From Trichoplax adhaerens (Eukaryota; Animalia; Placozoa): DNA of 64,000 bases. Shown here piece by piece: positions 33,801-64,000 of this stretch (position 1 is its first letter; each line of letters starts with the position of its first letter). Where the stretch lies: assembly GCF_000150275.1 (NCBI RefSeq), contig NW_002060950.1:1600106-1664105 (forward strand). Direction: 5' to 3'. The translations under genes were made by a program, and so were the position numbers. Under the pieces are notes generated by a model, which did not search any database, was not told the DNA's origin, and was given only the letters and a program-made list of their open reading frames with translations.

Positions 33801-35386
33801 TCTAGTATGAAATTATCATTGATACCTAGAAATTTACTAGTACCACAAAGATAGTTAGACGTAGTATGTTTAAAATCAAGTATAGCGCCCTTTATAAGGA
33901 GGTATCTTAGCATGAATAATTAATTATTATTGATACTTAGAAATTGATGCAGTACTGTATATTCTAAAATGAGTATAAGATTGTTACAAGAATACATCTT
34001 AGTATGACATAATCATTATTGATACCTAGAAATTTTCGAAGTCTAGTGGCATAACGATAGTTAGACGTTGTATATTTTAAATTGAATTTAGAACCATTAC
34101 AATATACTATCTTAGTATGAAATAATTATTATTGCTACCTAGAAAATTCTCGACTCTAAAGATATAAAGATAGTTAAATCTAGTCCATTTTAACGGCATA
34201 TTGAACCGTTATAAGAATATATATTTTAATATGAAATAATAATTATGCTGCCTAGAAATTTCCTAATACTAGTTATATCCAAGGCGATCGTTAGAGATAT
34301 AGTACATTTTAAATTGGGTATTTATAAGAACATCTCTTAGCATGAAATAACTGCTATTGATACCTAGAAAGTAAGCCTAACATTGGCATAATTGCATGCC
34401 AATATTAACGGATGCTATCTCATTTTGTTTTATTTTTACGTCCTTAACCTAAGCTGTCTACAGTAATCTTAAGGATACTCAGTATTAACTCTAAGAAAAT
34501 TAGAACTTATACTATTGTCATCTACTTATAACTGTAAACATCTACTGACATCTTGTCAGTAAAATATTTGGCTTAGTTTTTAGATACTGTTCATTCATTA
34601 CTGATATAGGTCAATGCAAAGTTTAATATATTCTAGACAAATGCAACCACTTTTATCTCCAGCAATTGTAGCTCTAAATAACATGCAGCTATCTAAATCG
34701 AGAAAAGAAACAATCAACATGGCGACTTACCCCTACTCGAAGGCCATATTTATCCAATAACCAGATGGAGATTGGACCTACAATGACAAATCCTAGCAAA
34801 ACTACGATGGAGAGCCAATTGACGTCTGATAATGAAATCTTGTAATATAGCGCTGTTGAATCAGCAATCATAGCAAAAGTATAATACAGCTGGAAAAAAA
34901 TAGGAGTCGAAATTTTAGCAAAAACAGGATTGCTACCCATTGAAATTCTCTTATTTCTTTATAGCTGTATCTACATTAATATAACTATCTTCATTCCGAG
35001 TAAGATGATAAAGTCATTTACTTTACTATGAATCGTTGGTCAAGATATAAAATCATATACTGAACAAGCTAATCGATAATGTGATGGCTTTAAGTCATGA
35101 CTGGTGGTGATAAAAATTCAATTTTAAAGCGAGTTCAACATGATATATTACTTACCATGGCGTTGCATAGATTTAAAAAGGTAATGGTGGCTAAAATAAA
35201 CCAGCGGTTAGGATGCACTTCTGGCACAGGATGAAGCCGTATCATTCCATAGACCGAATCGGAAGCACGATCGATAAAAGTTCCGCTATCGCTAACGGTA
35301 TTTTTCTCATATTTCTCCTCGTTATTTCCATAATTCATCATTAAATTGATATTTTCGTCATTCTTTGGAATCACGTTATTTGCCAT
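30876..35386 (-). CDS. Major facilitator superfamily transporter, SLC49A3/MFSD7 (FLVCR-related)-like; multi-exon
   Basis: HPNRWFILATITFLNLCNAM; VNWLSIV...WLLDKYGLR; GQGLIALGQP...TTKMAAVWFPDEERILANTIA; IEQILCPTGY; LELCVECSYPVDE; C-terminal F..TYKRKAAE. The motif order matches the SLC49 family and the boundaries are GT-AG. Confidence 0.85.
33740..34370. repeat. Intronic degenerate tandem repeat, ~90-115-nt unit, about 6 copies
   Basis: Variants of ATTATTGATACCTAGAAA at ~33815, 33928, 34015, 34128, 34243 and 34354; GATAGTTAGACGT recurs. Confidence 0.8.
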
Positions 35387-38300
35387 AGTAAATTGGAGCA
35401 GTTCAGTGTATTAGCGTAAGAAAAAACTGCAAATTGAAACTAACTCAATGATCAACACAGTCTAATCGTCAAGTAGAGACCTGTTCAAAATAGAAATAAA
35501 ATAATCTTAGCAATTTTTTTCCATTTTCTTCCGCCATGACTCATTCTTCTGATAATTTACATATTGAACTTTGGAATAAAATAATTAGTAGTACAAATTA
35601 AAATTCATAATTTTGCTCCTAACATCAAATTGAGCTGTTGATCCCTTCCTACTTTAATGATGACAGAATTATTCTTTTACAATTTAAAATTAGTCTATCT
35701 AGCCCAGGCATAATGGATTAATTAATGCAGTGTAGAACAACGAATAGGCAGAGGAATGTTGTATTTTTATCATCGAAAGAATGATGCTGCACTATAAAAT
35801 TCGTTATATTGCAGCAGGATAGAAGCTAGAGAATAATAAAATGAGAGTGCGATTTGCAACCGTTTATTAATTGAAAAGATGAGAAAAATCGATGAACCGG
35901 AAAGAATTTGCTTTTAGAATAGTACTTGTTAGAGACTGATCTAGAGATGGATCTTAGGGTACATTAAATTTTGACATGGCAATCACAACATGATGAGAAA
36001 ATGAAACTGCTTATTTTTTTATTTCGATTATCCAATTTATGTTTGTAATCAGACTAACAAATCGATAGATTACTACGTAAAGCCATCACTATGAATAGAG
36101 TTAACAAGTAATGCAAGCAACGGGCACCCTAGTGAAAATTAAAGCGGACGAAAATGAAGAATAAACGCTTTGATTGCTTCCAAACCTGTCAATAAAGTCT
36201 TTTATACCATAGATGACGACTTGCTAGGGTTTCAATTTTCAATCAGTAATCCGCTTTCATGATACCAAATGGAAAACAGTATAAGTACGAGTAGAAACTA
36301 CAAATTCAGCTGTGGTTTTAATCCTTTTTTGTTAAGATTTACTCTATCTTTCGAGGAAAAAGTAATCTTGGTGTGATTTAAAGCAAGTGTTGACGTATAG
36401 CTAATATTGAAATCATATGATACAACACCATGATTCCAGTGAAAATGGAAGAGTTTGTCCCCTAAGTTGATGTTTGGATAATCTAATTAAACCATTTTAA
36501 GCGTCACTAATATTATTGATTATAAAGAATAAGAGACTAGCCATTAATGCTGTGTCATGTAATCATTTGGATGCCAAAGAAATGGGTCAGCAAGAAATCG
36601 ATTTTATCGACAAGTAATTAATTAATAATATTATGAATTTCAATAGCGTAAATAGGTACACCCCTACGTTATACAAGTATAAAGGTGATTATTTCCGCTA
36701 TGAAAAGATTAATTGATTGATTGACGATAGGGTACAATTTAGCAGCAGGGAGAAAAGCAAGATGAACGATTGACATCCATCCATTAGGCATGGATTACTG
36801 GAAATATGACAGTTTTAGTAATCCAAGTTTTCAATCAGATCGAGATACATAACTTTCCCCAGTATATAAAATAGCACGAGATCTAAAAGCGATACGTAGG
36901 TCACTGCTAATAAGTTACTTTATACTATAGCTAATGTCAATTTAATTGCACACCTTCCTAAATTAATGCTAGTTTATTGTAGTGCCACCTGGCTTTTAAA
37001 AATTGTTTTTCATAGAATCTTGGACAAGTCTCTGCCTTCCATTATGCAATGATGACGGTAAAGAAAAAGTTTCAGCTGGCTCTTTCATCTTCACTTACGA
37101 AGAGCTTTGCAAAGATCTTAGGTGCTTTCGGTAGATTAAAGCTTGTATACGATTGCTATTTTTAATATACTTTCTGCTCTTACGAAACTGTCTACTAAAG
37201 TAGATACTGGCCAGTTTAGATGATAGTGGGCCTGCCATATACTACAAGAACAACAATTAGCATAGTTGCTGCAGTTGTTGATATTCTGCAGTAGAAATTG
37301 GCGATCGTTGTTGACCTCATTATGATGATTCTAGTTTATCCTAAGTGGATCAAACTGACAAGACTTCTATTCTAGTCATGATTTACTTTAGAATTAGAAA
37401 GCAGCAGCTGGTGATTTTTTTTTCTCTCTATCTCTGTTAAGGTTTTAGTTAAAAATAATCAACGCTAAATTTGTTATTATTACGGCATATTATGCTCGAT
37501 CATCAATAAAAAATAAATAACTATTTGGAGAGTCAAAAATATAAGCTATATTTTGCGACGTTGTTCAGTTGAAGTACTAACCTGAAGAAGTTTACATGGT
37601 AGCTAATGTACAGCAAAAGGATTCAATATCTTGCTCATCAATCTCAACTCTCAAATCGTTAAAAATTTGGATTATAAATAGATCTAACTATTGCAGTATT
37701 TCAAATAGCCATGAGCTTGATGGTGTTTTAACCTATTATCGAAGTAGGTGGGTATGTTTTGATAGTGATAGAGGCTTAAAATATGGTCGGTTAAACAGAT
37801 TGAATAATTAATTAACCACCTGTTTTTTCTCTTCATTCATTACCTACTGGAATTTATTTAAATAAATTAAATGAGGCAGGAATCTATCGAAAAATCTGCT
37901 TTGATTATTTGAAACCGGAGAGTCGACAGCCCGAAATCATACGAAAATATTTACTTCTAATAAAAGAAGTGGGCGAATTATTTTTCATTCCATGCTCTGT
38001 ATTAAACCATAGCCAAGCTGTTACATCTTATTGTGTATCTTTGCTGCCACTTGAAAACGTTCAAATCTGTTTTAGATAGTACCATTGATAGTTTTGATCG
38101 TTTTATTGACTTTAAATACTCCGTTCATAGTGTTAGAGCCATAAGTAGGCCAGACCTGTTACCAGTTGGAAGAATATGTTCTGTTTTTATGGCCCATCAA
38201 GACATTATAATTATAGGTGGGATCTGATGTAACCTTCTAGATCATCAGATATGGTTTAAAATGGTAAAATGAATTTATATCATGTTGGCGATAACCCTAT

Positions 38301-46074: not shown

Positions 46075-46350
46075 CGTACCGTACCGAACCGAACCTTTCA
46101 TCATGCTTGGATCGGTTCGTTTTTCTCTCTCGTCATCGAATCATGTGATGGTCGCACCCGCTCGCAGGACCAGTACCGTACTGGTACTGTACTGGTACTG
46201 ATACCTTTGGTATCGGTACGATACCAAAGGTTGACTTGCTTGGCGTTCAGGCGATAGAGATACGATATACTGTACAGTGTACAGTACTGTAGTACATTTG
46301 TACATTGCACTGTACTACTGTACATTGTACAGTACTGCACGCTACTGTTG
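46075..46350. promoter_or_regulatory. Palindrome-rich GTAC/TACTGTAC cluster in the divergent ATP6V0E-PSTK intergenic region
   Basis: TACTGTACA-N-TGTACAGTA at 46268-46286 and 46316-46334; perfect 13-bp hairpin at 46203-46231. A regulatory role is inferred from position only. Confidence 0.45.
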
Positions 46351-46401
46351 TCTACAGTATGCGCGTTATTACTCTAAATGTCCATGAACTACGATGGTAT
46401 C

Positions 46402-47185
46402 GGATGGACAGACTCTTGACCAGATGCGGCCGAAAACAAAAATACTTGCTCAGTATGCATCTTCCGTGTCTGTTTTGGAAATCGCTCGTATTCATTTGAA
46501 TAACATGGATGACCTCAAGTTACTGCTTCCAAGCAAAACTTAGTAACAGGCAATAGAATACAATGTAATATTACTTAATTAATATAGCAAAAATCAGTCA
46601 ATTCACAATCGATAGTCTTTATACTAAAGTGCTGTCATAATGAAGTGTTTGATACAATTGGTTGACCAAAGTTAGCCCGGTGTCTGTCCGTCCAACGGAA
46701 TGTCCAGTGTCCAGTCCAGCAACCCTTCTCGTCGTCCATGTCCAATTGTCCGTAGACCATCGTACAGACAGCGACTTCCAAGACTAACCAATACTGTACC
46801 TAAGAGGTTGGACCCGCTCTTTGAGCAGTATACAGCAGTAGTTACCGTCATGGACTAGAGTAGTATGTGGGGAAGAACTCAGACAGACAGAATCTTTGAC
46901 CAAAATGAGACCATCAGTAATGTCGAAGAATGACCACTTAGTATGGATCTTCCGTGCGTGTTTGCACTGGCACTAATTTAAATAACATCATCGATCTTAT
47001 ACTGTGTAGCTGTGTCCAAGAAGCACTTTATTAATAGGCAATAAGATTCACTATAATATTACTTAATTTAGAAGAAATCAGCCAATTCGCAAACTGCATG
47101 CTTACTGTAACTCTGTAAGTACTGTTATAACCAAGTGTTTGGCATAATATTTCGACAAGATGAGGTCAACGATGTCTGTCCGTCC
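46402..47185. repeat. Two diverged direct copies of a ~300-nt element with complementary termini (46402-46693 and ~46880-47185)
   Basis: Colinear shared blocks: AGTATG.ATCTTCCGTG, AGGCAATA, TAATATTACTTAATT, AAATCAG.CAATTC.CAA, AAGTGTTTG, TGTCTGTCCGTCCAA. Confidence 0.8.
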
Positions 47186-47402
47186 AAGAGTGGTCAATCC
47201 AGGTCTTCTGGTACACGGTACAGTATAGTACAGTGCTTTACTACAAGCGGTAGTAAAACAGCCAATAAGGATCAGAAATAGCAGAAATAAATCAATAAAA
47301 TAAGTAGAGAATCATTTCCACCACCGATGGATTAGTTTCTAGGCCAAATGATGAAAGCCAGTTAACATTTTGAACAGTTTAATGAATTAGTTATTCCCAA
47401 AG

Positions 47403-49941
47403 ATGGCTAGTCAGACAGTTTTACTCGCTGTTTATGGATTGCCAGGTGCTGGTAAAACATCTTTAATTCATCGATTAATATCAGCATTGCCCAATCATGC
47501 TCAGCCATTGATCCCCATTCATATTTGTTATGACTCAATACTACCTAAGGAAATTGACTTCCAGGTAAAGGCATCACGAATCGAGTGTTAATGCATGCTA
47601 TTGCATAGAAAGAGTTGCCTACAGGCTGTACAACTAGTATACCTATTATTGCAAATAATAATGTTTTGGAGGTAAATCATGAATATGTTTACAGTATTGG
47701 TGACTTCAAGCAATGCATTACGGATACCCCATTTTGCAGCTCATGTGATTTGTAGTAGAATTATTATTAAATATCAGCAACGATGAATGTTATTATTGCA
47801 CAATCCTTATGTCGATAAGTCCTGATTTCCAGCGGTTTAGTTACAAATCATACGGATATCGGAGCTTATGCGTAAGAATCTTCTTCAAAATTGGACGATG
47901 ATAGCTATCTCAGATGGCCAGTAGACGCGTAAAAGTACAGTACTACGAGAATGTCCCCGTTGGCAGTAAAAGTAGATTGTGCTGCAACCGACACAGTCCA
48001 CTTCATAAGTCTTAAAAAATGCTATAGCATTGTTCCTTAATGACTCATATCGAATTGGGTGATGGTACTAGGCGCCATTAAAAGATGATCTTCTTTTAGT
48101 AGTCAATAATAGCACTATACGTGGACGAGCTTGTAATTTCACCAGAACCAGTAATTAATCATTGACCGCAAATAGGGTTCTTGATAAATATAAGGAATCG
48201 TAATATACTATACTGTACTACGAGCTAATAAAATCTCCTGATACGAGAAATGCAGTGATAACAAGGGCCAGAGATGACTCACGTAACCGTAGAAGTTTCA
48301 AGATACACAGTATACTGTTTTGGGAAACTAACAAGTCTTCAATCGTTTTTAGGATAGTGAAGATACAATATGGAAGAACATGAGGCAGCTTATTTTGGAT
48401 TGTATTGAATATTATGAATGTTTTGATGATACTCTACTACCGTGGCAGACTAACCCTGATTATCGCGAAAAATGGCAAATCGTAAAAGAGATGATACAGA
48501 CTGCTAAGAAAGACAGTAAAAGGTGCTATTTGTTAAAATGAGATGTCATTGTAAAGTACTTTATACAACGAGTTCGACAACAAATTCTAATTATATAACT
48601 CTATTATCCATGATAAAATATCGTAGGTGCCTTTATATACTAGATGATAACTTTTATTATCGTAGTATGCGATATAAGATCTATCAGCTAGCAAAGAAAC
48701 GTGAGTGATTATTTCTTATTATGTGCAGTATTCATTTGCGAATGATGCTCGTATAGATCTATTTATTTTACATCCATTTATGCAATTGGGCCAATTTACT
48801 AGTGATAGTAGAACAGATAATCTTACAGTACTGTACATACTACCGCTTATCAGATCGTTGTGATTATTTGCAAAGCATAATTTGTGTTGTAAAAGTATTT
48901 CGCTTCTGTACGCATAGTATTTGATTGGCATAAGTTATACCTGATTTGTTGATCATTTAACTGTATTTAGTGTTTTATAGCATTTTAAATTGTCGTCGTA
49001 CATTTATCTGGTAGATGCATGGGGATATGGTCAGATTTGGGTAAAGTGCCCTCTTGAAGTAGCGTTTCGGCGAAATTGTAACAGAGTAGTTCCAGTTGCT
49101 CAAGCAACGATTACAAAAATGGACAGCAAATTAGAAGTTGCCAATTCCAGTAAATTTCCTTGGGAAGACAATAACTTCATCTTTGAAAGTACCAATGAAG
49201 ATCCTGATAATTGGTAAATTTAGATATGATAATGCATATTTTATTAGTAAGGAAAGATAGATACACGTTATGTAGACGCTTCACCGCTAAAATTGCTTTG
49301 CATTATAAAGTTAAAAGTTGCTTCGATTGTAAGGCTACCGTTGAAATGTTTTAAAATTTTTATTCTACTAGGAAGATGTTGCTCGATTTTACTATAGATA
49401 CCTTCAGCAAGCCGGTAGTATTTATTTCTTCGACAGATGAGCTACAAAAGGTTTATAAATTAGCTAAATTAAATGGAGGGTTACTTCGTAATAGCATTTG
49501 CATTATCTGATCTGATATTTCTGTCATGCATTTGTTATTGTGGTAATTGGATAGGAGAAAGATCGATCAATTATTGCCAATAATTTCCTACATCAAGCTG
49601 ATAAAATACTGAGAAAGTTAGTTTCACAATCTATACAACAATATATTGGAAAGGGTAAATATTTTTATTTTGCTTTGCTATTATTCAGTGATTCCTACTT
49701 TTGCTACCATTAATATTTAATTGTTATCTTTCGTCAAATTGTATACGTAGTAGGGAAAATAAATTCTCAAAATATAGATATATCCAAGGAGTTCAATGAT
49801 ATTAGAAAGGATATTATGACAGATTTACGCCGAAATTCCAACCCACAGCTTTATCAAGTGGAGTGCACTAACACTGACGAATTACCGTCTCTACTGAATC
49901 GGATCTATACAGAAAGGTGCTTGATGAAAGGTCATAAGTAA
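47403..49941 (+). CDS. PSTK: L-seryl-tRNA(Sec) kinase; 7 exons
   Basis: P-loop GLPGAGKT, HICYD, signature ILDDNFYYRSMRYKIYQLAKK, CPLEVAFRRNCNR...PWE, and HQADKILRKLVS. Exon 1 is 47403-47564; stop TAA at 49939-49941. Confidence 0.93.
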
Positions 49942-51038
49942 AGATGGCCAGCTATTGCTTAATAGAGTACGAGCATAGATCGTCACCAAATAATGATATC
50001 AAGGTTGTCATTACCTGACTATATGCAAACATTTCTATTGTATGGACTAAAATGCACTGATGCATGTCATGCCATTGGTATTTATAGCTGTTTTCAGTGT
50101 CTCTAATAAAACAATAGTATCTTATTCTGTAAATAACTTATACAGAAATGTACAGTATCTTAATATAAGTTAATAGTACAATAAACAATAAACCGTTCAA
50201 TATAATATTATCGTACAAATTTTTAATGCACAATAATTTTTATACGAAGTATTAATAAATGACAACTTGTCATATGATGCTATTTGGATTGTTATTACTG
50301 TGACAACGCGCACAGTTCTTATATAAAGCAGTAACAACAATCATTAAATTAAATTTACAATCTCAATAACCTAATACATAATTAAATATAGAATTCAGCA
50401 TTTTGATGCACGTTCATGTTTGATAAGCTTTGTAACTTATAGATAAGAAACTCTTAAACAAACAAGTGGATAATCAGATGATATAAAACAGTAACCTATT
50501 GCACATATCGTATTTGCAAGGAATATAATATTCACTATGAAGATAGTAGTTTCTATTAACGCCGTATTTTAAAACATTGCTAGTCAACTAAAGGTAGGCG
50601 TACATGTGATCAATTACAAATCGACTTGAATTATGTTAATGGTAACTCATTGTGTAGTTATGACGAAGTTGCAAACATCTAAGTTGATAGATTTGTATAT
50701 TACATAAAAGATCGGCTATTAAAATGTAGCAATAACCATCAGCGGTAGCAATACATTATTAAGTTAGTTGTGAGTTCCAAATCAAGATGCCTTGATAACT
50801 ATTAAAATTAGATTGCAAAAGTTGAATTTGAAATCACATTTAAAATTTTTTATAGGGTGATGCTCATCATGGCATTATGAAAAATAGACATTCTTATAAT
50901 GCTCATGATAATCTTATAAGAGTCAATATGTCGAAATATCGGGAAGGTTCTATCGATATTATACAACATAGGTATCCATTTATACCGTAAATATCTATAT
51001 ATATTCAGTTACACTACACTGTCATACTATAAAACTTT

Positions 51039-54000
51039 CTACTTCGATTTACTTTCTAAGTTTTCTCTGTAGTTCCTATATATAACAGATGAAAGAAATA
51101 TGAATCGCAATTGCTAAGCAAGAACTCAGGTTGTCATTATTTTATGTGTGCTTACTTCCGTGCTCTTTCTATTAAAGCTTCCCTTCGATCTAATAGAGAC
51201 GTAAGTCTTTCTGATGAACTTCTTCCAAAGTTCTTAGATGAGAATAAACTTCTATTAGGCTGTAAAGGACATCGATCATTTATCAATATCATTTTTGACT
51301 ATGTCGCAATAGTAATATCAAATTTATCTTACTGATGTAGATATCTCATTATTTTCGGTCTTCTTAGGTGGAGTTACAGGCGTATACTTAATTCTGCCAT
51401 CCAAGATTTTAGCAATAGTGTCATCAACGTTCTTAGTTATAGCTGTAAGAATAACAAAGGCAGAAATTAACATCTGACACTACTTTGCTTTTTGGGGGTA
51501 GTTTTAATTCTTATAGTCACCTAAATCCTTTTGAATTACATCGTAAGGAACCTGAGGAAAAACATCTTGCACTTGTTGCACCATCTTGGCCAGTCTGGTA
51601 TCCCTGGTAGGTGTTGTGGTCTTGGGGGATTTACTGCTATCTTTTTGTGGTGTCACAGGTTGAACAACTTCAGTTTGCGGATTATCGCTATTTATAACAC
51701 CATCTAAATAGTAAAATTAAGCATAAACGATTTATACAACGCTCAATAGAAATAAATATCTTTTTTCCATCAATAAAATATATCACCGTCTGCCTGTTTT
51801 TTTATTTGGGATGCCGATAACGAAGACTGTTCAGAGACTATTGGATCACTTCGCAAATTTAAAGCCTCACTTATCTCCTGTAAACATATTGATGAAAGTT
51901 GGTAAGGAGGCAAATATAAACGTTAGCCCTTAGCTGTTAGTATACAGATATCTCGTATATCTATTTCACAAAATGCCAAATTTAATAATATATAATACCT
52001 TTCGTAATCTAAATATAGCTTTATCATTAGATTCATTTGCATCCTTTGATAAGACAGGTAAAATACTAGATCATGAGAGTATAAGGGTAAATATTATTAT
52101 TTATCGTATTACACAAACATGGTTCATGCCTGCAGGAATGATTAGTTCATACCGTATATCATAAAATGTATAAGGAACGAAAAAATGCCACAATAGGTCT
52201 TCCCATCGATTACTGGTTCGAGTAGTCTAATAAATATTAAAATGAAGATAATGCGAATATCACCCTTACGTCGTATCTTCCTACTGTATCGATACTAAAA
52301 CAAACTACCTACCAATCTGACATAACCAAGAAATGGTCGTGTAGCTTTAATTACAATCTATATAGAATAACATAGGCAATGTCAAAATCTTGGTAAGATC
52401 ATAATATTAAGTATTGCTTAGTTTACATAATACATGAATCAAGATGCTACAATAGCAACGTTCTTAACAGCAACTTCATACTCGATGTGTTTATGATCAC
52501 TAAATCATTATACTTACTGGCTGTACAGAATGTTCTGTCTCGAAAATCCAATCACTGTTGAACGATAAAATATGTAAACACGCATTTATGAAAATGTACA
52601 GTTTACGCTACGTAAACGAAATTGATTTTAAAATGATTAGAGTAAACGGTAAGCAGATTACAAACATGAGTACAGTATATCATCGTACAATTTAAGTGCT
52701 ATAAAAATTTACTGATCTCTTACCAAAATTCTAGTAAGGATTTTCCATCGGAAATAGTGCGTTCAGGGAAAAGAAGGATGGGTTGAGATAACTCTAAAGG
52801 CAATTAAGTGTCATGGTTAGTTTACATTAGGATATGAAGAAGTAGAATTTTATCTGAGAAACTGCAAGATCTTTGGGGAAGTAATTACTGCCATATTACA
52901 TAAATGATCAATAATGTAACAGTCTACGTATTAGTTTAGTGACTACACACTTGCTACTCGTTATTACTAATACTACTTTCACTATAAGATATAAATGTTG
53001 TAGAGGCATACGCGTTAGCAGAGCAATGAGGGAATGCTAGTAAGAGAGTATGAAAGTAAAGCTGTAAGATACAGTGCTCACCAGTTTTGCTTTTACAAGC
53101 CTTAAGGAATTCTTCTCTTGACGGATAATAATCTTTGCTATATGATCTATTGACCTTCATTGGATATAAAGAATAAGTGCTACTTTAGGACTATAATCAA
53201 TCTGTATGAAATCAATCATTTAAGATATACAGCAATGCATTGATTACATGGCAAAAAAAGACCCTGTATTCATTCTTCAAGTATTATGCCATAATTACAA
53301 ACGCGGTGGATAACAGATTAGGAGTCCTGACTCGCTAAGCTACTACACGCTACCCTGCAGTTACCGTACGTCAAGTTCCTTCTAAGGTAAAAATTCTATT
53401 TGCACTATTAGCACGTCTACCGAATATTACTTTCCAATGGGATACTTGGATAGTGGTCATGTACGGTATACAATAAGGTGAAGTCATTAAAATTTCGAAT
53501 CAACTAGCAACATTATCGATATTTTTAAAGGCATCGGCTGATGTACTAAACCTGTGATCGTAACTGGAACTATTGACTCTAATTAGATACGGTATTGTTC
53601 TTTCCAGTTATTAACGTTCACACTACTTCATGGACATAAGTATTTTTAATCAAGCGAGTTAAAACTGGTACAATTTACTGGATCCAGGAGACCAGGATCG
53701 CACAAATTGCAGTTTTGCTCAATCCTGATTACTGTACTACTGTATCCTGTATTTTTAGGCTGCTATCGACTAAAGAATTTCCATATATCAACATGGAAAG
53801 ACGACAACTAGATAAGAGCGATAAGGCTATCTATCGGCTTGATACAGAGGTTAAAACCGGGTGCAAGAGATTCGCTCAAGTATGTTCCCAACTTACTTGT
53901 AACGTCGTATTCAATACGGTAGCATCCATAACCGATACATGATTACTGACGATAACCTATACAATAATATAGCATATAATACGATTAGAGAGACTTTTGA

Positions 54001-54523
54001 TGTTGATCTAGAGATAACTTTCCATGAAGTCAACAAGCAATTTTGCCTTGATCATACCGAAAGATTACGAACCTTGTTATTCGAGGATAACTGATGACGG
54101 CCAGAACAATGCACTAGCATACCACAAACAGCTGAAATACTTTGCAATATAAACCTACAAGAATATTGAAGCAAGTATCGCATGAATGACACATTTTAAT
54201 CACGATCAATATATCATGGCTTTGATTGCAGGTCAATTAATCCAACCTTCTTATAGAGCCATAGTAACATGGTATGAAATGAGCAGCTAATTGCAGCTGC
54301 AGATAGACAGCAAGGCGTAAAATGAGTAGAACCAATCCAATTGGACCGTATAGCAAAAGGAAGATTAACCGGATATCGTTTGGAAATCTATAAAAAAAAT
54401 AATTCATAAATGCTTGGTTGTATGCTCAAAGTATCCATCAGACTCTACGGATAAGTAGTCTAGTTAATGAATGATTAATCACAACGAAAGCAGACTGTTG
54501 ACCAACCTAGATGGACTAGCCAT
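51039..54523 (-). CDS. AUP1: Ancient ubiquitous protein 1 (lipid-droplet/ERAD factor): membrane hairpin, acyltransferase-like domain, CUE and G2BR
   Basis: RFPNDIRLIFLLLYGPIGLVLLILRL; VSNHVSVMD; PILLFPE; CUE-like MVQQVQDVFPQVPYDVIQKDLAITKNVDDTIAKILDG; G2BR-like ERLTSLLDRREALIERARKNY. The 17-nt first coding exon (54507-54523) is inferred; stop TAG at 51039-51041. Confidence 0.9.
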
Positions 54524-54779
54524 TTTTCTGCAGGTTGCAATGATGGTCAAGGCCGCACGCGTGCCGCGAACTTTATTTCCAGTTAAGGGTTTACACTGTA
54601 CTGTACATGCTGTAGCGTGCCGTACAGTACAGCACCATGGACTACAACATACTGACAGACAGGCAGACTCACTGTAGTCATGGGCTTCTACAGCTGGAAG
54701 CCCATGCTTTGGCTGTACGATAGACTTTACAGTACACAGTTAGATCATCGTCGGGGTCAGTCCACCATGGAGGAGGCAA

Positions 54780-55270
54780 TAGAAAAAAAGCCTTTCGATG
54801 GTATTATATCAATGAAGTGAGGTGATCAGCAAGAACAGTCCAAAAATCCATACTAAATAGGTATGGACTCTTCAACATGCTCGATAACCCCATACTAGAT
54901 CTTGGATTTTGGTGCTTACTATTGCAATCGAGAAGATGCTAGTGGCATCATGGGGAAAGGAGCTAGAACTAGAATCAGGGAATGATGTAGAATAAGTAGC
55001 TAAATATTATCATGATGCAAATCATTTTCAACAACTGCTGCTCATTAAAGTTTGGGACGATTATGAGTCGCTTAGGAACGATGTATTAGGTTAATAGCGA
55101 TAGAGTACTTTCAAATTGATATGAGTCTCATCAAACATGCTTAATAACACTGTCGATCTTCGGTTTTGGCTCTTGCTATTCAAATCGAGTAGTTGCTATG
55201 GCATCATAAAAAGTAGCACTACAGTTTATTTATTACTAGTATCAGGAAATGGAGTATAAGTAGTTAAGTT
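54780..55270. repeat. Degenerate tandem duplication, ~257-nt unit, 2 copies
   Basis: GATCTT.G.TTTTGG..CTT.CTATT..AATCGAG.AG.TGCTA...GGCATCAT at ~54898 and ~55155. Confidence 0.7.
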
Positions 55271-55809
55271 AAATACTTGATTACTTGTGTCATGCCATTT
55301 AATTTTTTCAATCAATTATGAACATAGAGTCGTAGAAAACCTGGAACAATGATATAAATAAGTTGTACTTATCGGACCTAACATAACAGTAGTAGAAAGA
55401 AAGAACTACGCTATGCCTTTCGCATATTCGCTTGGTGCTCAACGCAAAAAGGCAGCTAGGGCAGCAGACAGTTACAAGACGGTTAGTACTTTACAATAGT
55501 TTAGATATTTCATCAACCAACAAACAAACAGACTTCTATTTCTATACATGTAAGGAAATTGAAGTATAAAACAGCAATGTTTATATTGCATAAGCGATGC
55601 CAACATAGAAGTACGTATATCATCAATTTTAACTTTATGGTAGTACCTAATACACAATACTGTACGATGGCCACGTAAAACATACACAGTATACTGCTTA
55701 GCTGATACTAATAAAGCATTACAAATCCAGGCATATCTGTTACTAACTAATCTAATGAAACAAAATCAGAGCATACAACTGATTTTATTGCTTATAACAT
55801 TGTAGCATA

Positions 55810-55814
<5 letters not shown>

Positions 55815-55843
<29 letters not shown>
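55815..55843. repeat. (AT)n microsatellite
   Basis: About 14 perfect AT units. Confidence 0.95.
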
Positions 55844-57274
55844 CTGTGCATATGTATAAACACAGTTACTGCATTAATTGACCTAGTTGATACCTTAGCT
55901 GGATAAATATCTGGTATAACAGGGATAAATAAATATGATTATAACACAGAAGAAATACTAAAGTCGAAAATACGTACATCGTATATCAATATCAGAAATT
56001 AGCAAGGTTAAATCATAGTAGAGTAATTAATTATCAATATAAACATTTGACGATCGATGCTGTGCGGTATTTCGGCATACAAAAAATTAAAATTACTGTA
56101 CAATTCTAATGCATCCGAAATATGTTTGTCGTACTGTAGGGCTTTCAACTAAGTACTCTATCAATAATTAACACATCAACGCGCACATATTTGGTATATA
56201 GCTTATATAACGATACCGCATAAAGATACAATCAATGATTCGTAATTCCTAGTTCAATCAATTTTGTAATGTAAAGCTAAATATCGTTACATTTGACTAT
56301 AGAATTGTAAAACACTCGTATCTAGATGATAATGGCTAAAAAGTACCGTAAAATATTAGATAAATAACTTAGTAAATATCATTTGAAGTGTTATATGGCA
56401 ATAAATTGTATCATGTTTTACTTTATCTGGCTCACAATTATCGTTAATATAACATAAATGGCATAAATGACATCTGGCTGGAATACTCCTCAACAAAAAT
56501 TATTTAAAATATATGTTTGCTCTCATTGGAAAATAAAATTTTAAAGCATATTTTAATTTAATGTAAACAATAGCGTACGTGTAATTTATAGGCGCTTTAA
56601 AAATCGATATAAAAACCAATGTGAACAATTAGCATTTAATCAATTAGTAATCTCACAATAACTAAAAATCTGGTCTAAGTTGGGTTGAAGCAATTGGGGA
56701 ATGTTATCATGATAATTTAATAGTAATTTCTACTTTTCTTAACTTAATGACAATTAAATCTATTAGTATTGGTGTACGTGATTTGCCGTTAAGTTATTGT
56801 TGGTAATGTAAGAATTCGATCAAATCACGAATGTAATAATAGAAAATACTAAAATATTAATCACTTTCAATTTCTAAAGCTAGAATTAGATGAGGAAACA
56901 GAAATTATTTCATTCTCCAATTTTAGCTTCAGTTGCTAAAGTTTAGAGCAGGGTCGGAGCTCCTTCCTGGTCATTATAGCCATATAAATGTATTCCATAG
57001 ATTTCATTCAACCGTTCGAATAATTTATGGGATTAATCTAGCCATTACAGAATTAAGTCAAATGGCAATAATTCACTTCGATTGTTAAAGATATTGATAA
57101 ATCACCCGTAGAGTTAGTGGTAAAAATACTACGTAGTCATTTTTTCTTCAATTTTCATTATTTTAAATGACGATATTGCTTTTCTGCTGATACCAAACGA
57201 GGATTTCGTAGTAAGTATAAGTTAACATGTCGTATTTTGAAACTTACTTCCTTAAAAGGTTATTCAACAGAACT

Positions 57275-60200
57275 TTAGGAGTCAATATGAATATCATTCG
57301 GCGTCGATACTGGTTCAATAGTTTCATCGTTTATTATATTTATTTTAAGCGTATTGTCGACAGGATTGCCATTATCAGATGTAATAAAAGCAGCAGTGGG
57401 ATTATCTGCTTGGTTAGTTACATTAGTCTGGGAAAAATTCTTGCTATTCTCAATTACAACTCCGCCTTCAGAAGAATCCGTGCCTTTTTCGATGCCAATA
57501 TCGGTAACTCCAATATCACTGTTACTATCATTTGCATTAAGATTTTCATTACTTTTGCTGGCTGTCAATAAATTCTCAGCAGAATTTTTAGCGGAAGTCA
57601 AGTGGGTTTGATTTTGTCCACCTTCCAGACCGTCGTCTTCTTGTGATGAAAAATCGCTCCATTTGATATCAAGTTCACTTAACTTTTCGGTAACTATTTT
57701 TTCTATACTTCGTCTTTTCATGTTACGTTTTATCAGTTTCCTAAATACACGATCTAATCTTCTCGCAAATGTATTAACATCATCTTTTTTCAATCCAATA
57801 GCAGCAGCAGCTGTCAAGTATGCATAAGGGTAATTATTGTAATGGGATCCATAATTTTCAAATGTGACTGATCCTATTTGCTTTGTTACACCAGGGGCTA
57901 TAGCTCTGACAAAAAATCGGTACATTTAGTAATGGCTAAAGAATGACTTAATAATTAATGAAATCTAGGTAATCTGTTCGTAAGTATCCATACCGAATAA
58001 AGATATGCACAAAAAAGGTATACAACCACGTAGTGTACTTATAATTTAGAAAAAAAATACTATTTGACTTAATACCTTGCCCCAGAAATGTTTCGGGTAA
58101 AGAGCATTGACCCTAGTTCGGTTGCATGTTTAGTAGGCATAGAAGATAATGTAATACCTATTGTTGGTGTGATAAGAGTGTAGGTTAGGAGTTACTAATC
58201 ATTACAGCTAAGGTAACAACGCCATGCCATTAAAATCAGCTAAAAAATTAGTACATCGGTCAGATACCTATAGATATTGCATTATTAGGGGTGACTAAAA
58301 GTCGTTCACCGTGAGCTGATGCGACCTGTTGCAAGCGCTTTTGTAGATATCGATACATTCCCTAGAAAAAAATTCGTTTCAATAATCATATAGTATAGCA
58401 AAAAGAATCTCATGTCCTGGCCACAATATATATTTATATCTTTCCTTCGTTCTTTATATAGATATACAAATTTTAGAGTCTATTTGACGAAATATTTGTA
58501 TAAGTAAGTAGTTGCAGTAGATCGCTTTGATCTGTAAGCCTTAAAGCTAGCATACTCACTTTTCGCTCTATCAGTGAATCCTTGAACCCTTCTACTCCCA
58601 TTGATAGTAAAGTCACAAATAGATCCATAACTGGAGCAGCTGACGCACGTCCTGAAATGATAATAAAAAACGTAATAGTTAATTAATGTCTGCACTTCTT
58701 TTCATTAACTGGAAATAAGTAATCCTATACCCGGATAAGTTTGGCTAATCTTGCTGATAAAACTGTCATCAAATCCTGCGATTACAGCTCCACCGACAGG
58801 AACCATAAAATTTTTGTCTGTGCTCTGAATAAATGCATCGAGCCTGCCAGAGCGTGCAGCCTTTTAAATAAAGTTTAAAAATAGTAGTAAATTAAGCAAT
58901 TAATTTTCACAAACTGCCACTCTCAATAATATCAGTGTTCTACTATATTTATGTACTATGTACTGTATCTATATATTATATACTTATAAACCTGCTCTAT
59001 TAGATGAGTGCATTTTGAAGATTGTAAACCATATGCATTATTAACTACGTGTGGAATCTCGAATTCCTTGCACAACTTGCCAATTGCTTCTAAACTATAA
59101 ATTGTAAATTGAAATAAGATTATGTTTGATTCTCAAATTTCAATTCATGTCATGATCGTCATTGTGAACGGCGAAACCTTAATTTAGTTCAAAGCTATAT
59201 TGCGTTAACATACTTTATGAAACTATTACATAAGAATTAATACTTTATCGTACCTATCAGGAGCCCGTGGTGTAAAGCAACTTGTAGTAGTGTAAATACA
59301 CAATATTTGTTCAGGCGGTATGCCTTTCAGATGTTTTTCTATCATCTGTACATCAGTTCTTAATTCATCTTCAACTAAAATATTCTCAATGACGATTGGT
59401 TCAAAGCCTATGAATGCAACATTATCTCAGTTTACAATGACTGATTTTCAGATAGAACTATTTATAAAATTGTAGTATTTCATTAGAACGCTAAGCTATT
59501 CCTAAAGATATTCTTACCAGCTGTAAAAATAGCCTTAAAGCAAGATTTTTGATCTACTCTAGGCCAAATGATATACTTTGCTTCAGGTCTCATCTGTTTA
59601 ATGGTTAGAAAGGTCAAAACCATACTCATTCCAGTTGCCATAGGAACCACAATGCAAGAAGATGCACTCCGAACGCCTGTTACGATTTTAGAAAAGATTT
59701 TAATAGATAATTGTAGTAACGGCATGAAAACAATATTTCATATCCACATGATCACACAGTAAAAATTGGAATTGCATTCAAGCTCCAGTAATAAGTACGG
59801 TTTATGTCATTGCAAGCTATCAGCATAATACAGACTAGAGCAGCATAGGTAACACTAGTCATTATTGCAAATTAATGGGATCATTAATTCTACATATACA
59901 CGTATATTAATAGCTAGCGTAACTTTAGTCTCAAGACAGGCATAGGAGATTGACCGGGTTGATGTAAATTGTAATACTATATCTGTATCGCATAATGCAT
60001 CGAACGAAGACAAAGAGTATACTAATGACTCTGATCTAGCTAATTAGCAATAGAGATCATTGGTTTACGGTTCGTAAAGTAATCCTATTATTGCTAATTA
60101 TTAGCTCTGCTATCCCAACGGTAAGAAAGTCAACATGCGTATAAATGATGAAGCAAAAGTAAAGATATCCTGTATCTATACCTGCAATTCGAATGGCATC

Positions 60201-63200
60201 TAAAACCATTGCATTAGTTAGTTTCATCATTAGAGAAGATCCTGCAGCCTTTGGTTGTACGGCAGCAATATCGCCAGATCTTCCAATACCGTGGGCCAGT
60301 CTATCGTTATAATGATAATAATTAGCAATTTGTGCAAACAAAGACGTTGTTTACATCAAATACCAAATAGCGTAGACAGTAGCTATGAAATTATTTAAGG
60401 CATATTTATTAACATACCAGTATTGTCTGAGGTCTATAAAGAATAGTTACTGTACAGTGTTGAATAGGTACTTTCTTGCGGTACAAGCTACAACTGATAT
60501 TCATTGTGTACAGAATGACGGATACGATAACAATTATAACTTCATAATTGAATTTAGAAATATAGAGAAATTCAACATCTGCCAAGTAATATGAGGCAAA
60601 ATGATCTTTACTTATTTTTATAACTGCTCATCTATTTTAGCGCTCATTAATCATACAATATTCATTAATTAATAACCGAGGCTATTGTAACAATATTTAT
60701 TATTTCTAATATGTTATATAATTAGTTTAATATTGTACCCATAATGTCTCTGAACAACAATAGGCGATGCAATTCTACCTTCTCTTTCTCCAATCCCAGC
60801 ATTACCTATATTGGTGATATACGCGTAGTTTATCATGAACTGGTCAAGGCTCATTATGCTGAATAAAAAATGCGCATAAATATATTGCAATTTAAAAGAC
60901 TAAGTACTGTACACAGCAAGCAGTACTACGGCTTTTGTTTTGTATCATTGCTGGCTTGGTAATTATTGAAATATTAAGATTGTACTTCAAATTTAAGAAA
61001 TTGTTAATGTTGATGCAGTTTTACAGACCTAAAAAATTATTGCTGTCCATCGTGGATATTTCGTTTAATAACATTTCGATTGTTGATCTATCCCATCCTT
61101 TGACCGGTAGCTTTTTCTACCATTATTCAATCAACAGAAAGAATTAAATCGTTGGCAATAGATATATATATATTTAAATTTAAAATAAGCAATTAATTAA
61201 TAATTGGCGATAGTTATGTAGTGAAAAGATATTGTCTACATTAGCGGCGTAGTACGAAGTTAATCCCTTTATATTATATAAAAGAAAAGAGGGTTTTGTA
61301 TATGACGGTTATAGAATGAAAGCGGAAAGGATATACTGTACCAACGAAAAAATTACTTTACTGTGTGTAACTGCTAATGTGGAATGCAATGTACCCTAGG
61401 GACTCATAATATGATATTACGGTATAATTATTCTATCTGGTTATTTTAAGTGAACTTAGGAGCATTTATAGCGATAAATTTACGGCTATTATAATGATCA
61501 TCCACGGCTGCTCGGTAGAGCGTCACATCTATACAATATACACTGGGCTAAATTATGAGCATATTCTTGCTCATCATTGAATGCATGACTTTGATCGCAT
61601 TAGATTTTAAAAGAATACTTTCAGTAATCCGGTTACAGTATCACGCCGTAATGCCTTGATTAAATTAGCGCTATTCCTCATTTTTAATTTATTCATTATT
61701 GAATATGAGCATATTAGATTACATTTACGTTGTAAACATGACATACTTTTGGCACTGACTGTGCTATACTGTGAATTACGTGTACAGTATTTACATTGTT
61801 GCGGTAATTCTTTATTGATATTATTGGTAATTAAGAATGTTTCCACTAATTATAATCATCATTCTAGGCCTAATATCGAGCTTTGAAAAGCAATTGTAAT
61901 GCTTTAAACGTGGTTTAATGGATGTTCATTCAAAGATGGTTATGTACTGTACGTGTACAGTATATGACGTTCATAGTGGTTGGACTGGATCATGAACCTC
62001 TCAAGCTCTCTAAAAAATGAGGCAAGAGCATGTACGAGAGTAGAAGCATTAAGCGACTTTTGTGTCGAATGAATTAGCATACCGATATTAAACTATTTCG
62101 TAAGAGTAAATACTGTAAATTAATCTAGCGTACTATGTACAATTTTGATGTTGGTGAATAATTAAAATTATCGTTCAAGCAATTTAATATTAAGCGTTGT
62201 ATCAGTGGCACACAGCTGGATTCAGGTTGATAATTATAATAGTTTCAATCTAGATGATATTAATTCATTCATAAAGGTAAGGTATTGCCTGGGGCGATTT
62301 AATCTATCGTGAAGATGCACTTAGAGGCTTTTGATGGCATGAAGAAACGACTAGAGACTATCGTTAATAGAAGACAATGGAGTACTTTGTTCCATAGTAG
62401 ATTTTTGGTTATAACTGCGAGAGGTCTGGCATTGTTATTATTTGTTCTGTTGAATAATGATGGTTGTTAAAGTTCATCAATGTATTTGTTCAAAAAGCCA
62501 TTAAGGTAAACTAAGTTTAGCAGTGGAGTAGCAGTGAATAAAGCAGTCTTTTCTTTTTCGTTGACGAGATAGGTTTTATTCTTTACCGTAAATCTGACAA
62601 TGTAAGTTGTGCCATTAAAAATAGGAGACGTCGATAAGATTTCTGGTGGATATGCACGTACTATTCCATTTAATTAGTAATACACTATATCATAAAAAGA
62701 GATATTAATTAACATGAAATGGACCAAGTCTTAAAATGATTTTTATCGTTGTATATCGCCCCCCCCCCCACCAAAAAAAGAGGAAGTAAAAGATGGTAGA
62801 ATACAGTGGTGGTAATTTTGGGACATATCTGGTGTTATCAAGTGTAATGTTTTTACTGCCGATGATACTATCTCAAGATTGAGTGACAAGGAGTGAATAA
62901 AATTGGCCATTGCTTATGATTGATCAATGCTAGAGAATACTGCCATTGATCAGATCCGATCATAGAAGCACGTCTAATTACTTAATTAATCGATAACATG
63001 ATCTGCGATAGTGAATATGTACAGCATGCAAACTAAAGAATGTATCATTGATGGCATAGCATTCTTTCTTATACAGATTATATCCTTTTTCTTGAATAAA
63101 GTATTTATGATTGTAAAACATATCATTCCTACGTATGAGTTACCATTTAGGTCTTTAAACCATTTATGCGAGTACAACGATCATCATTGCAAGATAGGTT

Positions 63201-63780
63201 CAGCATTGGAGATGATTGAGTGCGAGGTTGCATCAATATTATAATCATTATTATTGTTAGTATGTGTGCATTTGGTGTAACACAAGAGGGAGGTAAAAGG
63301 TAGGGGGCTGCCCCCAAATCGCTTGCTATCCCTCTTGTCTATTTATTGATATCCTAGCTAAGAGAGGAGTATCTTGATTGACCTCATGTCAGTATTTTTA
63401 ACATTAATCTGAGATGTTGACCATAGGAATTTCACAAACATCCTCTATTGTTCTGCTTGATGTGAAGTATTATCAAATATATTTCATTGACAGTTTCCAG
63501 TGATTACTTTACGCTAGCTATCAAGTTAGACGGAAGTATATACTTGGTTGGCTGTTCGAATGGTTCACTAAAACAGTGGTCACCTTTTGCGCTAATTTAC
63601 CCATCAATGATACAACCCCAGTGGACAAGCAAAATGCAAACAACAATTTCAAGCAAATGCACTTACATGTTCTAAGAGGATTTTAATGTAATTTTCATGA
63701 GACTTTCTCGATTGTTTTCCTTGCTCTACATAAGTTGAAGGTAGGAAACGGCAAGCAAGAGCGAAATTTTCTACATTCAT
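57275..63780 (-). CDS. SEPSECS: O-phosphoseryl-tRNA(Sec) selenium transferase (SepSecS); about 12 exons
   Basis: Exon 1 (63667-63780) [38 protein letters not shown]; [18 protein letters not shown]; [21 protein letters not shown]; VPMATGMS; [11 protein letters not shown]; [11 protein letters not shown]; [11 protein letters not shown]; PLP-lysine motif [13 protein letters not shown]; YLTAAAAIG. Stop at 57275-57277. Confidence 0.97.
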
Positions 63781-64000
63781 ATTCTGTCATTCAAGTGGTA
63801 GAAGTAAGAGAAAATATTATTTTCAATGAAGAATTTTTCACTGCAATGGCGAATGCAAAGCGAGAGGGTTGGCCAAAGGTGGCAGTGAAGGCGAGCTGAG
63901 TGGTGCGTGTGTTGAGTAGAAAGTGAGTCGACACTTTATAAACGTACTTACAGTATAGCGTACTGTACACTGTACAGTGTGCAGTAGTAGTACGCAGACC

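What the first reader, a model, noticed from the sequence alone, without database searches (positions are those of the whole stretch)
47403..63780. Selenocysteine-synthesis gene cluster: PSTK and SEPSECS linked in an animal-type genome
Seen: PSTK (+, stop 49941) and SEPSECS (-, stop 57275) converge ~7.3 kb apart, separated only by AUP1. Established: PSTK phosphorylates Ser-tRNA(Sec) and SepSecS converts the product to Sec-tRNA(Sec); these are consecutive dedicated steps of the archaeal/eukaryotic route, and the genes are on different chromosomes in human. Two typically single-copy genes being next-but-one neighbours is unlikely by chance in a genome of thousands of genes. Inference: a eukaryotic pathway mini-cluster, either ancestral microsynteny or selected co-regulation. 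They are not co-transcribed (opposite strands) but share a promoter motif cluster. I cannot verify whether this has been described before.
Basis: partly seen in the sequence, partly recalled or inferred. Interest (0 to 1): 0.85.

Follow-up and report, generated by a model that had tools for sequence, protein, structure and literature searches.

The report
PSTK and SEPSECS neighbours in Trichoplax
In the placozoan Trichoplax adhaerens the two enzymes that make selenocysteine on its tRNA really are encoded 7 kb apart, but this looks like a leftover of an ancient chromosome block still traceable in humans, with nothing to show a co-regulated gene cluster.

Summary
The window is Trichoplax adhaerens scaffold DNA. 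It carries an intact, single-copy PSTK (+, 47403-49941) and an intact, single-copy SEPSECS (-, 63780-57275). They converge, with a spliced and expressed AUP1 (-, 54523 to about 51155) between them. There is no assembly gap, and contigs from other sequencing runs agree.

The "shared promoter motif cluster" is not specific. The TACAG/CTGTA tracts are denser in front of AUP1 and occur at other places in the window. tRNA-Sec, SEPHS and KTI12 lie on other scaffolds.

The neighbourhood looks like a conserved linkage block. TAPT1, three prominins, SEPSECS, PSTK, a PWWP gene and, 310 kb away, COE/EBF all have human counterparts on 4p15, 10q26 and 5q33, which are arms of the NKL/MetaHox paralogon. Human AUP1 (2p13.1) fits too. 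The likeliest reading is that both genes sat on one ancestral chromosome and were kept on different duplicate chromosomes after the vertebrate genome duplications.

Nothing shows co-regulation. The genes are not adjacent in human or Drosophila. This scan has already reported the same kind of human-mirroring block elsewhere in this genome (s1-766221). Interest is modest.

The parts
47403..49941 (+). PSTK (L-seryl-tRNA(Sec) kinase) gene, seven coding exons: about 47403-47564, 48353-48526, about 48631-48699, about 49017-49213, 49372-49450, 49555-49654, 49751-49941
   Evidence: TIGR03575 matches at 48565-48738, 49020-49196 and 49555-49644. P0001 = TRIADDRAFT_58609 maps to the first five pieces. 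Frame 49555-49710 matches other PSTKs (E 1e-6). The last two introns are GT..AG and phase-compatible. The last exon has no significant similarity.
47105..47233 (.). TACAG/CTGTA motifs upstream of PSTK (4 hits at 47105, 47113, 47219, 47229)
   Evidence: 4 hits against 1.3 expected.
51155..54523 (-). AUP1 gene (coding part). Introns 51443-51520, 51704-51786, 51877-51997, 52066-52152, 52227-52312, 52358-52517, 52555-52723, 52794-53081, 53153-53894, 53954-54069, 54152-54243, 54388-54506. Start codon at 54523. The 3' end (about 51155) was not confirmed by RNA.
   Evidence: RNA-contig joints with CT..AC ends in two runs. Exons are in phase without stops and carry an HxxxxD motif at 53895-53953. CUE domain PF02845. 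PDB CUE domains of AUP1 and AMFR match.
54596..54732 (.). Two TACAG/CTGTA motif clusters just upstream of AUP1 exon 1, probably the AUP1 promoter
   Evidence: 9 hits in 54524-54800 against 1.0 expected.
54733..57274 (.). Spacer between the AUP1 5' end and the SEPSECS stop. No recognisable coding gene. Weak unspliced RNA contigs at 55298-56394 and 56647-57039. A microsatellite at about 55804-55883 breaks short-read contigs.
57275..63780 (-). SEPSECS (O-phosphoseryl-tRNA(Sec) selenium transferase) gene, about 12 exons. The last exon, 57275-57925, carries a low-complexity tail of about 150 aa.
   Evidence: PF05889 on exons. Exon frames. Alignment to human SEPSECS including Lys284. An RNA contig covers 57061-57399.
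63949..63977 (.). TACAG/CTGTA motif cluster upstream of SEPSECS

Best explanation
Shown: in Trichoplax adhaerens, genuine, intact, single-copy PSTK and SEPSECS lie tail-to-tail with 7.3 kb between their stop codons. An unrelated, expressed AUP1 lies between them. Each gene has its own 5' region. Inferred: the trio sits in a block of deeply conserved linkage. TAPT1, three prominins, PSTK, AUP1, SEPSECS and a PWWP gene lie within about 100 kb, and COE/EBF lies 310 kb away. Their human counterparts lie on 4p15, 10q26, 5q33 and 2p13, the arms of the NKL/MetaHox paralogon. So PSTK and SEPSECS were most likely already on one chromosome in the placozoan-bilaterian ancestor. After the two vertebrate genome duplications, PSTK survived on the 10q copy and SEPSECS on the 4p copy. 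The very close spacing in Trichoplax is most simply neutral: linked genes in a compact, slowly rearranging genome that were inherited or shuffled together. It does not look like a co-regulated unit, and the genes work as ordinary, separately transcribed genes.
For: Gene identities and single copy. Contiguity: no N in the interval. Contigs from other runs cover about 46.5-55.6 kb in one piece and tile the rest except a microsatellite. Separate transcription: AUP1 introns and exon 1. Generic motif: five clusters in the window against 0.03 in shuffles, strongest at AUP1 and at 46.3 kb. Other Sec machinery is unlinked: tRNA-Sec on C1412, SEPHS on C1409. Linkage block: TAPT1 at C1407:1.567 Mb, all prominin matches at C1407:1.590-1.621 Mb, COE/EBF at C1407:1.29 Mb, PWWP just past the window. 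Human PROM1, TAPT1 and SEPSECS are all on 4p15 (PMC11369800), PSTK is at 10q26.13 (PMC7290473), and the NKL paralogon is 2p/8p, 4p, 5q, 10q (PMC2211742). A second scaffold, C1392, carries four more paralogon markers plus a homeobox gene; 6 of 12 markers fall on these two scaffolds (P about 3e-6).
Against: Only 2 of 12 pre-chosen markers fall on C1407 itself (P = 0.054). C1392 was singled out after the fact. RBPJ, SLC34A, MOGS, ATE1 and MCMBP lie on other scaffolds. Several human map positions (AUP1, EBF, PWWP2, TTC1, NCAPG, NSMCE4A, SLU7, THG1L) come from memory. Orthology of the flanking genes rests on Pfam domains, not trees. No other non-bilaterian genome could be examined. Even within one linkage group, being next-but-one neighbours has a chance of only about 0.5-1.3%, so selection is not excluded.
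Confidence: 0.6

Rival explanations
1. Chance adjacency without ancestral linkage. PSTK, or the PSTK-AUP1 pair, moved into the TAPT1-prominin-SEPSECS block in the placozoan lineage. The human 10q26 position of PSTK on a paralogous arm would then be coincidence.
For: For any one pair the chance is 3.5e-4, but with thousands of functionally related pairs and a scan of many windows, several such neighbours are expected. Adjacency is absent in human and Drosophila. The scaffold-level marker test is marginal (P = 0.054).
Against: All three genes and most identified flanking genes map to arms of a single human paralogon. That would be a second coincidence.
Confidence: 0.24
2. A selected pathway mini-cluster. 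PSTK and SEPSECS are kept close because a shared chromatin or regulatory domain, or inheritance as a unit, benefits two enzymes that always co-occur.
For: They catalyse consecutive dedicated steps and co-evolved precisely (PMC2275090). Neutral chance is about 1% or less. Both upstream regions carry TACAG/CTGTA tracts.
Against: The motif is generic and stronger at AUP1. An unrelated gene lies between them. They are on opposite strands with 5' ends 16 kb apart. tRNA-Sec and SEPHS are unlinked. There is no adjacency in human or Drosophila. The literature states that eukaryotic Sec machinery genes are scattered (10.1101/314781).
Confidence: 0.13
3. Assembly artefact. The two genes are joined by a misassembly between 50 and 57 kb.
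For: Short-read contigs from other runs break at a microsatellite at about 55804-55883, and some contigs run on into unlike sequence near 54641, 55903, 56736 and 56861.
Against: There is no gap in the reference interval. Runs filed under two organism labels and several studies hold 0.80-0.88 of the sampled words of the 6 kb stretch. Contigs tile both sides with overlapping ends, and one 9.1 kb contig covers PSTK plus AUP1.
Confidence: 0.03

Closest known systems
Conserved linkage between Trichoplax scaffolds and human paralogons
   Same: Neighbouring Trichoplax genes have human counterparts spread over the arms of one four-fold paralogon, here NKL/MetaHox (2p/8p, 4p, 5q, 10q; PMC2211742). TAPT1 next to prominin mirrors human TAPT1-PROM1.
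   Different: Here two of the linked genes happen to be consecutive steps of one pathway. In human they ended up on different duplicate chromosomes.
Bacterial selenocysteine operons (selA/selB/selC/selD clusters)
   Same: Physical linkage of genes for selenocysteine synthesis and insertion.
   Different: Bacterial clusters are co-transcribed and use SelA, not PSTK and SepSecS. Here the genes are convergent, separately transcribed and interrupted by AUP1. The literature says eukaryotic Sec genes are scattered (10.1101/314781).
Eukaryotic metabolic gene clusters (for example yeast GAL and DAL clusters; fungal and plant pathway clusters; from general knowledge)
   Same: Non-homologous genes for steps of one pathway lie close together.
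   Different: Those clusters show co-regulation and usually three or more pathway genes. Here there are only two genes, no specific shared regulation was found, and no conservation was shown.
Reciprocal loss of duplicated genes after the vertebrate 2R genome duplications
   Same: Single-copy genes that were linked before duplication survive on different paralogous chromosomes (PSTK 10q26.13, SEPSECS 4p15.2).
   Different: This is inferred from map positions only. No pre-duplication chordate genome was examined here.

Membership tests
PSTK (L-seryl-tRNA(Sec) kinase; TIGR03575, within Pfam PF08433 KTI12/PSTK) | Matches the eukaryotic PSTK equivalog rather than KTI12 | tested here: met
   TIGR03575 matches three exons and nothing else in the genome. 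PF08433 matches only a different gene on C1411. The whole-protein cut-off (382 bits) could not be tested because the exons were not joined.
PSTK (L-seryl-tRNA(Sec) kinase; TIGR03575, within Pfam PF08433 KTI12/PSTK) | P-loop GxxxxGK(S/T), Walker B Asp and RxxxR motif (PMC2275090) | tested here: met
   G12, G17, K18, D44, R155 and R159 of P0001 are invariant or nearly invariant in the 15-sequence alignment A1. The motifs can be read directly.
PSTK (L-seryl-tRNA(Sec) kinase; TIGR03575, within Pfam PF08433 KTI12/PSTK) | C-terminal tRNA-binding part present | tested here: inconclusive
   Frame 49555-49710 matches other PSTKs at about 245-276 of 345 (E 1e-6). The last exon has no significant match. 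The splice phases fit.
PSTK (L-seryl-tRNA(Sec) kinase; TIGR03575, within Pfam PF08433 KTI12/PSTK) | Phosphorylates Ser-tRNA(Sec) | not testable with these tools
   This needs an enzyme assay.
SepSecS (Pfam PF05889) | Profile match over the family cut-off along the domain | tested here: met
   Six exon matches cover profile positions 30-388, each above 21.1 bits.
SepSecS (Pfam PF05889) | PLP-binding lysine (human Lys284) | tested here: met
   Exon 58708-58863 aligns to human SEPSECS 269-313 with the DKNF lysine kept (E 1.6e-17).
AUP1 | N-terminal hydrophobic hairpin, acyltransferase-type HxxxxD motif, CUE domain and C-terminal UBE2G2-binding region | tested here: inconclusive
   CUE is met (PF02845; PDB AUP1 and AMFR CUE domains match equally). 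The HxxxxD motif and hydrophobic N-terminus are read from in-phase exons. The likeness to human AUP1 beyond CUE rests on memory. The joined protein was not searched.
Co-regulated eukaryotic pathway gene cluster | Pathway genes physically adjacent | tested here: met
   7.3 kb from stop to stop, with one gene between.
Co-regulated eukaryotic pathway gene cluster | Shared, specific regulatory element or common transcript | tested here: not met
   The genes are on opposite strands. TACAG/CTGTA tracts also occur at AUP1, 46.3 kb and 24.3 kb, and are denser there.
Co-regulated eukaryotic pathway gene cluster | Adjacency conserved in other lineages | not testable with these tools
From the literature, adjacency is absent in human and Drosophila.
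Co-regulated eukaryotic pathway gene cluster | Co-expression beyond that of random neighbours | not tested
   Only contigs were available, and these cannot rank expression.
Conserved linkage block homologous to the human NKL/MetaHox paralogon | Flanking genes have human counterparts on 2p/8p, 4p, 5q or 10q | tested here: met
   TAPT1, prominins, COE/EBF and PWWP lie on C1407. Human positions come from PMC11369800, PMC7290473 and PMC2211742, and partly from memory.

The most novel reading that the evidence does not exclude
PSTK-SEPSECS is an ancient metazoan microsyntenic pair, that is, close neighbours since before the placozoan-bilaterian split, kept together by selection on two co-evolving enzymes. 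In this reading the pair survives in Trichoplax and perhaps other non-bilaterians, and was broken in vertebrates only by reciprocal loss after genome duplication.
Probability: 0.13. Interest if true: 0.6.

Novelty: new member of a known kind. Interest (0 to 1): 0.3.

Why it matters
If the linkage is ancestral, it gives a simple, testable account of why two strictly co-evolving selenocysteine genes sit on paralogous human chromosome arms: one ancestral chromosome followed by reciprocal loss. It also adds two easily recognised single-copy anchors to the NKL/MetaHox linkage group. It would not change what is known about how selenocysteine is made. A conserved, selected pair would be a rare animal example of pathway clustering, but nothing here shows that. 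A practical by-product is that the public Trichoplax PSTK model is truncated.

Tried and rejected
Conservation in cnidarians, sponges, ctenophores and other placozoans is therefore untested.

PSTK-SepSecS adjacency in archaea and metagenomes was therefore not tested. The Asgard and Lokiarchaeota papers mention no such adjacency.

The supplements of two synteny papers are not held. Paper searches for PSTK plus SEPSECS plus synteny or microsynteny found nothing.

Spliced proteins were never joined. Exons were searched one by one by reference, so the whole-protein cut-offs and a full-length SEPSECS or AUP1 search were left out.

The ANAPC4 and LDB profiles found nothing in the genome, which is uninformative. 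No homeobox gene lies on C1407.

KTI12 as the identity of the kinase was considered and rejected. No tRNA or Rfam family lies in the window.

No structure or complex prediction was run, because no binding claim is made.
Full report
**Source.** The window is G000:C1407:1600106-1664105. The genome has 105.6 Mb in 1414 contigs and about 31% G+C. The PSTK protein retrieved from the window is TRIADDRAFT_58609 of Trichoplax adhaerens, on a contig of 3,375,187 bp. This is placozoan DNA.

**SEPSECS.** Pfam PF05889 matches three listed ORFs. In a whole-genome six-frame search it matches six exons, all over the cut-off, all on the minus strand at window 57743-60302, and nowhere else. Stop-to-stop frames show about 12 exons from the ATG at 63780 to the stop at 57275-57277. 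Exon 58708-58863 aligns to human SEPSECS residues 269-313 with the PLP lysine conserved (E 1.6e-17). The last exon adds a low-complexity tail of about 150 aa beyond the end of the domain.

**PSTK.**
- The Pfam KTI12/PSTK model matches only a different gene, on C1411.
- The eukaryotic PSTK equivalog TIGR03575 matches three exons in the window and nothing else in the genome. The gene is therefore PSTK and not its paralogue KTI12.
- A search of 1.84 billion representative proteins with exon 4 returned the public Trichoplax model and diverse PSTKs. UniRef names the model L-seryl-tRNA(Sec) kinase.
- The P-loop, Walker B Asp and RxxxR residues are invariant or nearly so in a 15-sequence alignment (the motifs are defined in PMC2275090).
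- The public 247-aa model is truncated. It reads through a donor site into the intron at 49451-49507.
- The frame at 49555-49710 matches other PSTKs at about 245-276 of 345. The introns 49451-49554 and 49655-49750 are GT..AG and phase-compatible. The last exon itself has no significant similarity.

**AUP1 and the spacer.**
- Contigs from two RNA runs laid on 51400-57399 give twelve minus-strand introns. The exons translate in phase without stops from an ATG at 54523.
- The exons carry an HxxxxD acyltransferase-type motif, a hydrophobic N-terminus and a CUE domain (PF02845). The CUE domains of AUP1 and AMFR in the PDB match equally well.
- From memory, the size of about 400 aa and several motifs fit human AUP1 rather than AMFR.
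- Between the AUP1 5' end and the SEPSECS stop (54.7-57.3 kb) there is no recognisable gene, tRNA or Rfam family. Only weak unspliced RNA contigs are found there.

**Contiguity.** There is no N between 47403 and 63780. Runs filed under two organism labels and six studies hold the 6 kb stretch. One 9.1 kb DNA contig covers about 46.5-55.6 kb, which is PSTK plus AUP1. The rest is tiled by overlapping contigs, except for a microsatellite at about 55804-55883. Misassembly is unlikely.

**The shared promoter motif.** TACAG/CTGTA tracts do stand upstream of both genes. However, the window has five dense clusters against 0.03 in shuffles, at 24.3 kb, 46.3 kb, twice at the AUP1 5' end, and at SEPSECS.

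| Region | Hits |
|---|---|
| AUP1 upstream | 9 |
| 46.2-46.4 kb | 8 |
| PSTK upstream | 4 |
| SEPSECS upstream | 4 |

Two unchecked scan notes say the same motif marks 5' ends elsewhere in this genome. It is a general 5'-end motif, not a link between these two genes.

**Other selenocysteine machinery.** tRNA-Sec is on C1412 (78 bits) and SEPHS is on C1409. Only this one pair is linked.

**Chance.** For one named pair the chance of being next-but-one neighbours is about 3.5e-4. For the 21 pairs among seven machinery genes it is about 0.7%. With 10,000 or more functionally related pairs, several such neighbours are expected in any genome. The finding was picked after the fact, so its significance is weak.

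**What the neighbourhood is.** I chose human genes with family-specific Pfam models from 4p15, 10q26, 5q33 and 2p13 and located them in the Trichoplax genome.
- On C1407: TAPT1 at 1.567 Mb, all prominin matches (three genes) at 1.590-1.621 Mb, COE/EBF at 1.29 Mb, and a PWWP gene 4 kb beyond the window.
- In human, PROM1 (15.97 Mb), TAPT1 (16.16 Mb) and SEPSECS (25.12 Mb) all lie on 4p15 (PMC11369800). PSTK lies at 10q26.13 (PMC7290473), the band that holds HMX2, HMX3 and NKX1-2.
- LBX2 and TLX2 lie at 2p13.1 (PMC2211742). From memory, AUP1 lies there too.
- Holland and colleagues define 2p/8p, 4p, 5q and 10q as the NKL/MetaHox paralogon.
- A second scaffold, C1392 (895 kb), carries NCAPG, NSMCE4A, SLU7 and THG1L. 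It also carries a homeobox gene that I read as Not-type (not tested).

The statistics are as follows. Six of twelve detected markers fall on these two scaffolds, which make up 4% of the genome (P about 3e-6, but C1392 was chosen after the fact). For C1407 alone, 2 of 12 gives P = 0.054. RBPJ, MOGS, ATE1, SLC34A, MCMBP and the strong PF10237 match lie on other scaffolds.

**Reading.** PSTK, AUP1 and SEPSECS belong to a conserved linkage block. The two selenocysteine genes probably shared a chromosome before the placozoan-bilaterian split. After the vertebrate duplications they were kept on different duplicate chromosomes. Whether the 7 kb spacing itself is ancestral cannot be told. The human positions suggest the two loci were megabases apart before duplication. 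In Drosophila, SecS is flanked by CG2922 and CG2919 and pstk is at its own locus (PMC2500217). Specialists state that eukaryotic Sec machinery genes are scattered (10.1101/314781). I found no paper that describes this linkage.

**Limits.**
- Spliced models were searched exon by exon and the joined step was left out.
- Several human map positions are from memory.
- Orthology of the flanking genes rests on domain matches.

**Verdict.** This scan has already seen the same kind of block elsewhere in this genome (s1-766221).

Noticed in passing
window 49372-49941: The public PSTK model (TRIADDRAFT_58609, 247 aa) misses the donor at 49450/49451 and ends in intron sequence. Two further coding exons (49555-49654, 49751-49941) appear to restore the C-terminal part found in other PSTKs.
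   Followed up: partly
window 57278-57740 (-): The last SEPSECS exon carries a tail of about 150 aa, rich in Ser, Asn, Asp and Glu, beyond the end of the SepSecS domain. Human SEPSECS has only a short tail (from memory). RNA contigs cover its 3' part.
   Followed up: no
window 55298-56394 and 56647-57039: Weak, unspliced RNA contigs lie between the AUP1 promoter and the SEPSECS stop, while AUP1 introns have no RNA cover. This may be a long SEPSECS 3' UTR, read-through, or an unannotated transcript.
   Followed up: no
window 24308-24349, 46270-46357, 54596-54732, 63949-63977: Dense TACAG/CTGTA (GTAC-core) tracts: 5 clusters against 0.03 in shuffles. At least two stand in front of gene 5' ends confirmed here (AUP1, SEPSECS). 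This looks like a general placozoan 5'-end motif.
   Followed up: partly
G000:C1407:1567328-1621404 (window up to about 21300): TAPT1 lies next to three tandem prominin genes. These are the only prominin matches in the genome. The arrangement mirrors the human TAPT1-PROM1 neighbour pair at 4p15.32.
   Followed up: partly
G000:C1392 (894,902 bp): 116982, 143837, 462913, 696780, 801516: A small scaffold holds a Not-type homeobox, NSMCE4A, NCAPG, THG1L and SLU7. Their human counterparts lie on 2p13, 10q26, 4p15 and 5q33, so it is probably another piece of the same ancestral linkage group as C1407.
   Followed up: partly
window 55600-55757, 55804-55883, 56878-57020, 54194: Two allelic bubbles and a microsatellite break short-read contigs in two organism labels. 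One run has an 8-base insertion behind 54194, inside an AUP1 intron.
   Followed up: no
window 30879-35410 (-): A major-facilitator transporter gene (MFS_1 exon matches) lies between the prominins and PSTK. Its orthology, possibly to the FLVCR/SLC49 type, was not resolved.
   Followed up: no
G000:C1411:1616733-1617660 and C1392:696780-697732: There are two Thg1-family (tRNA-His guanylyltransferase) loci in the genome.
   Followed up: no
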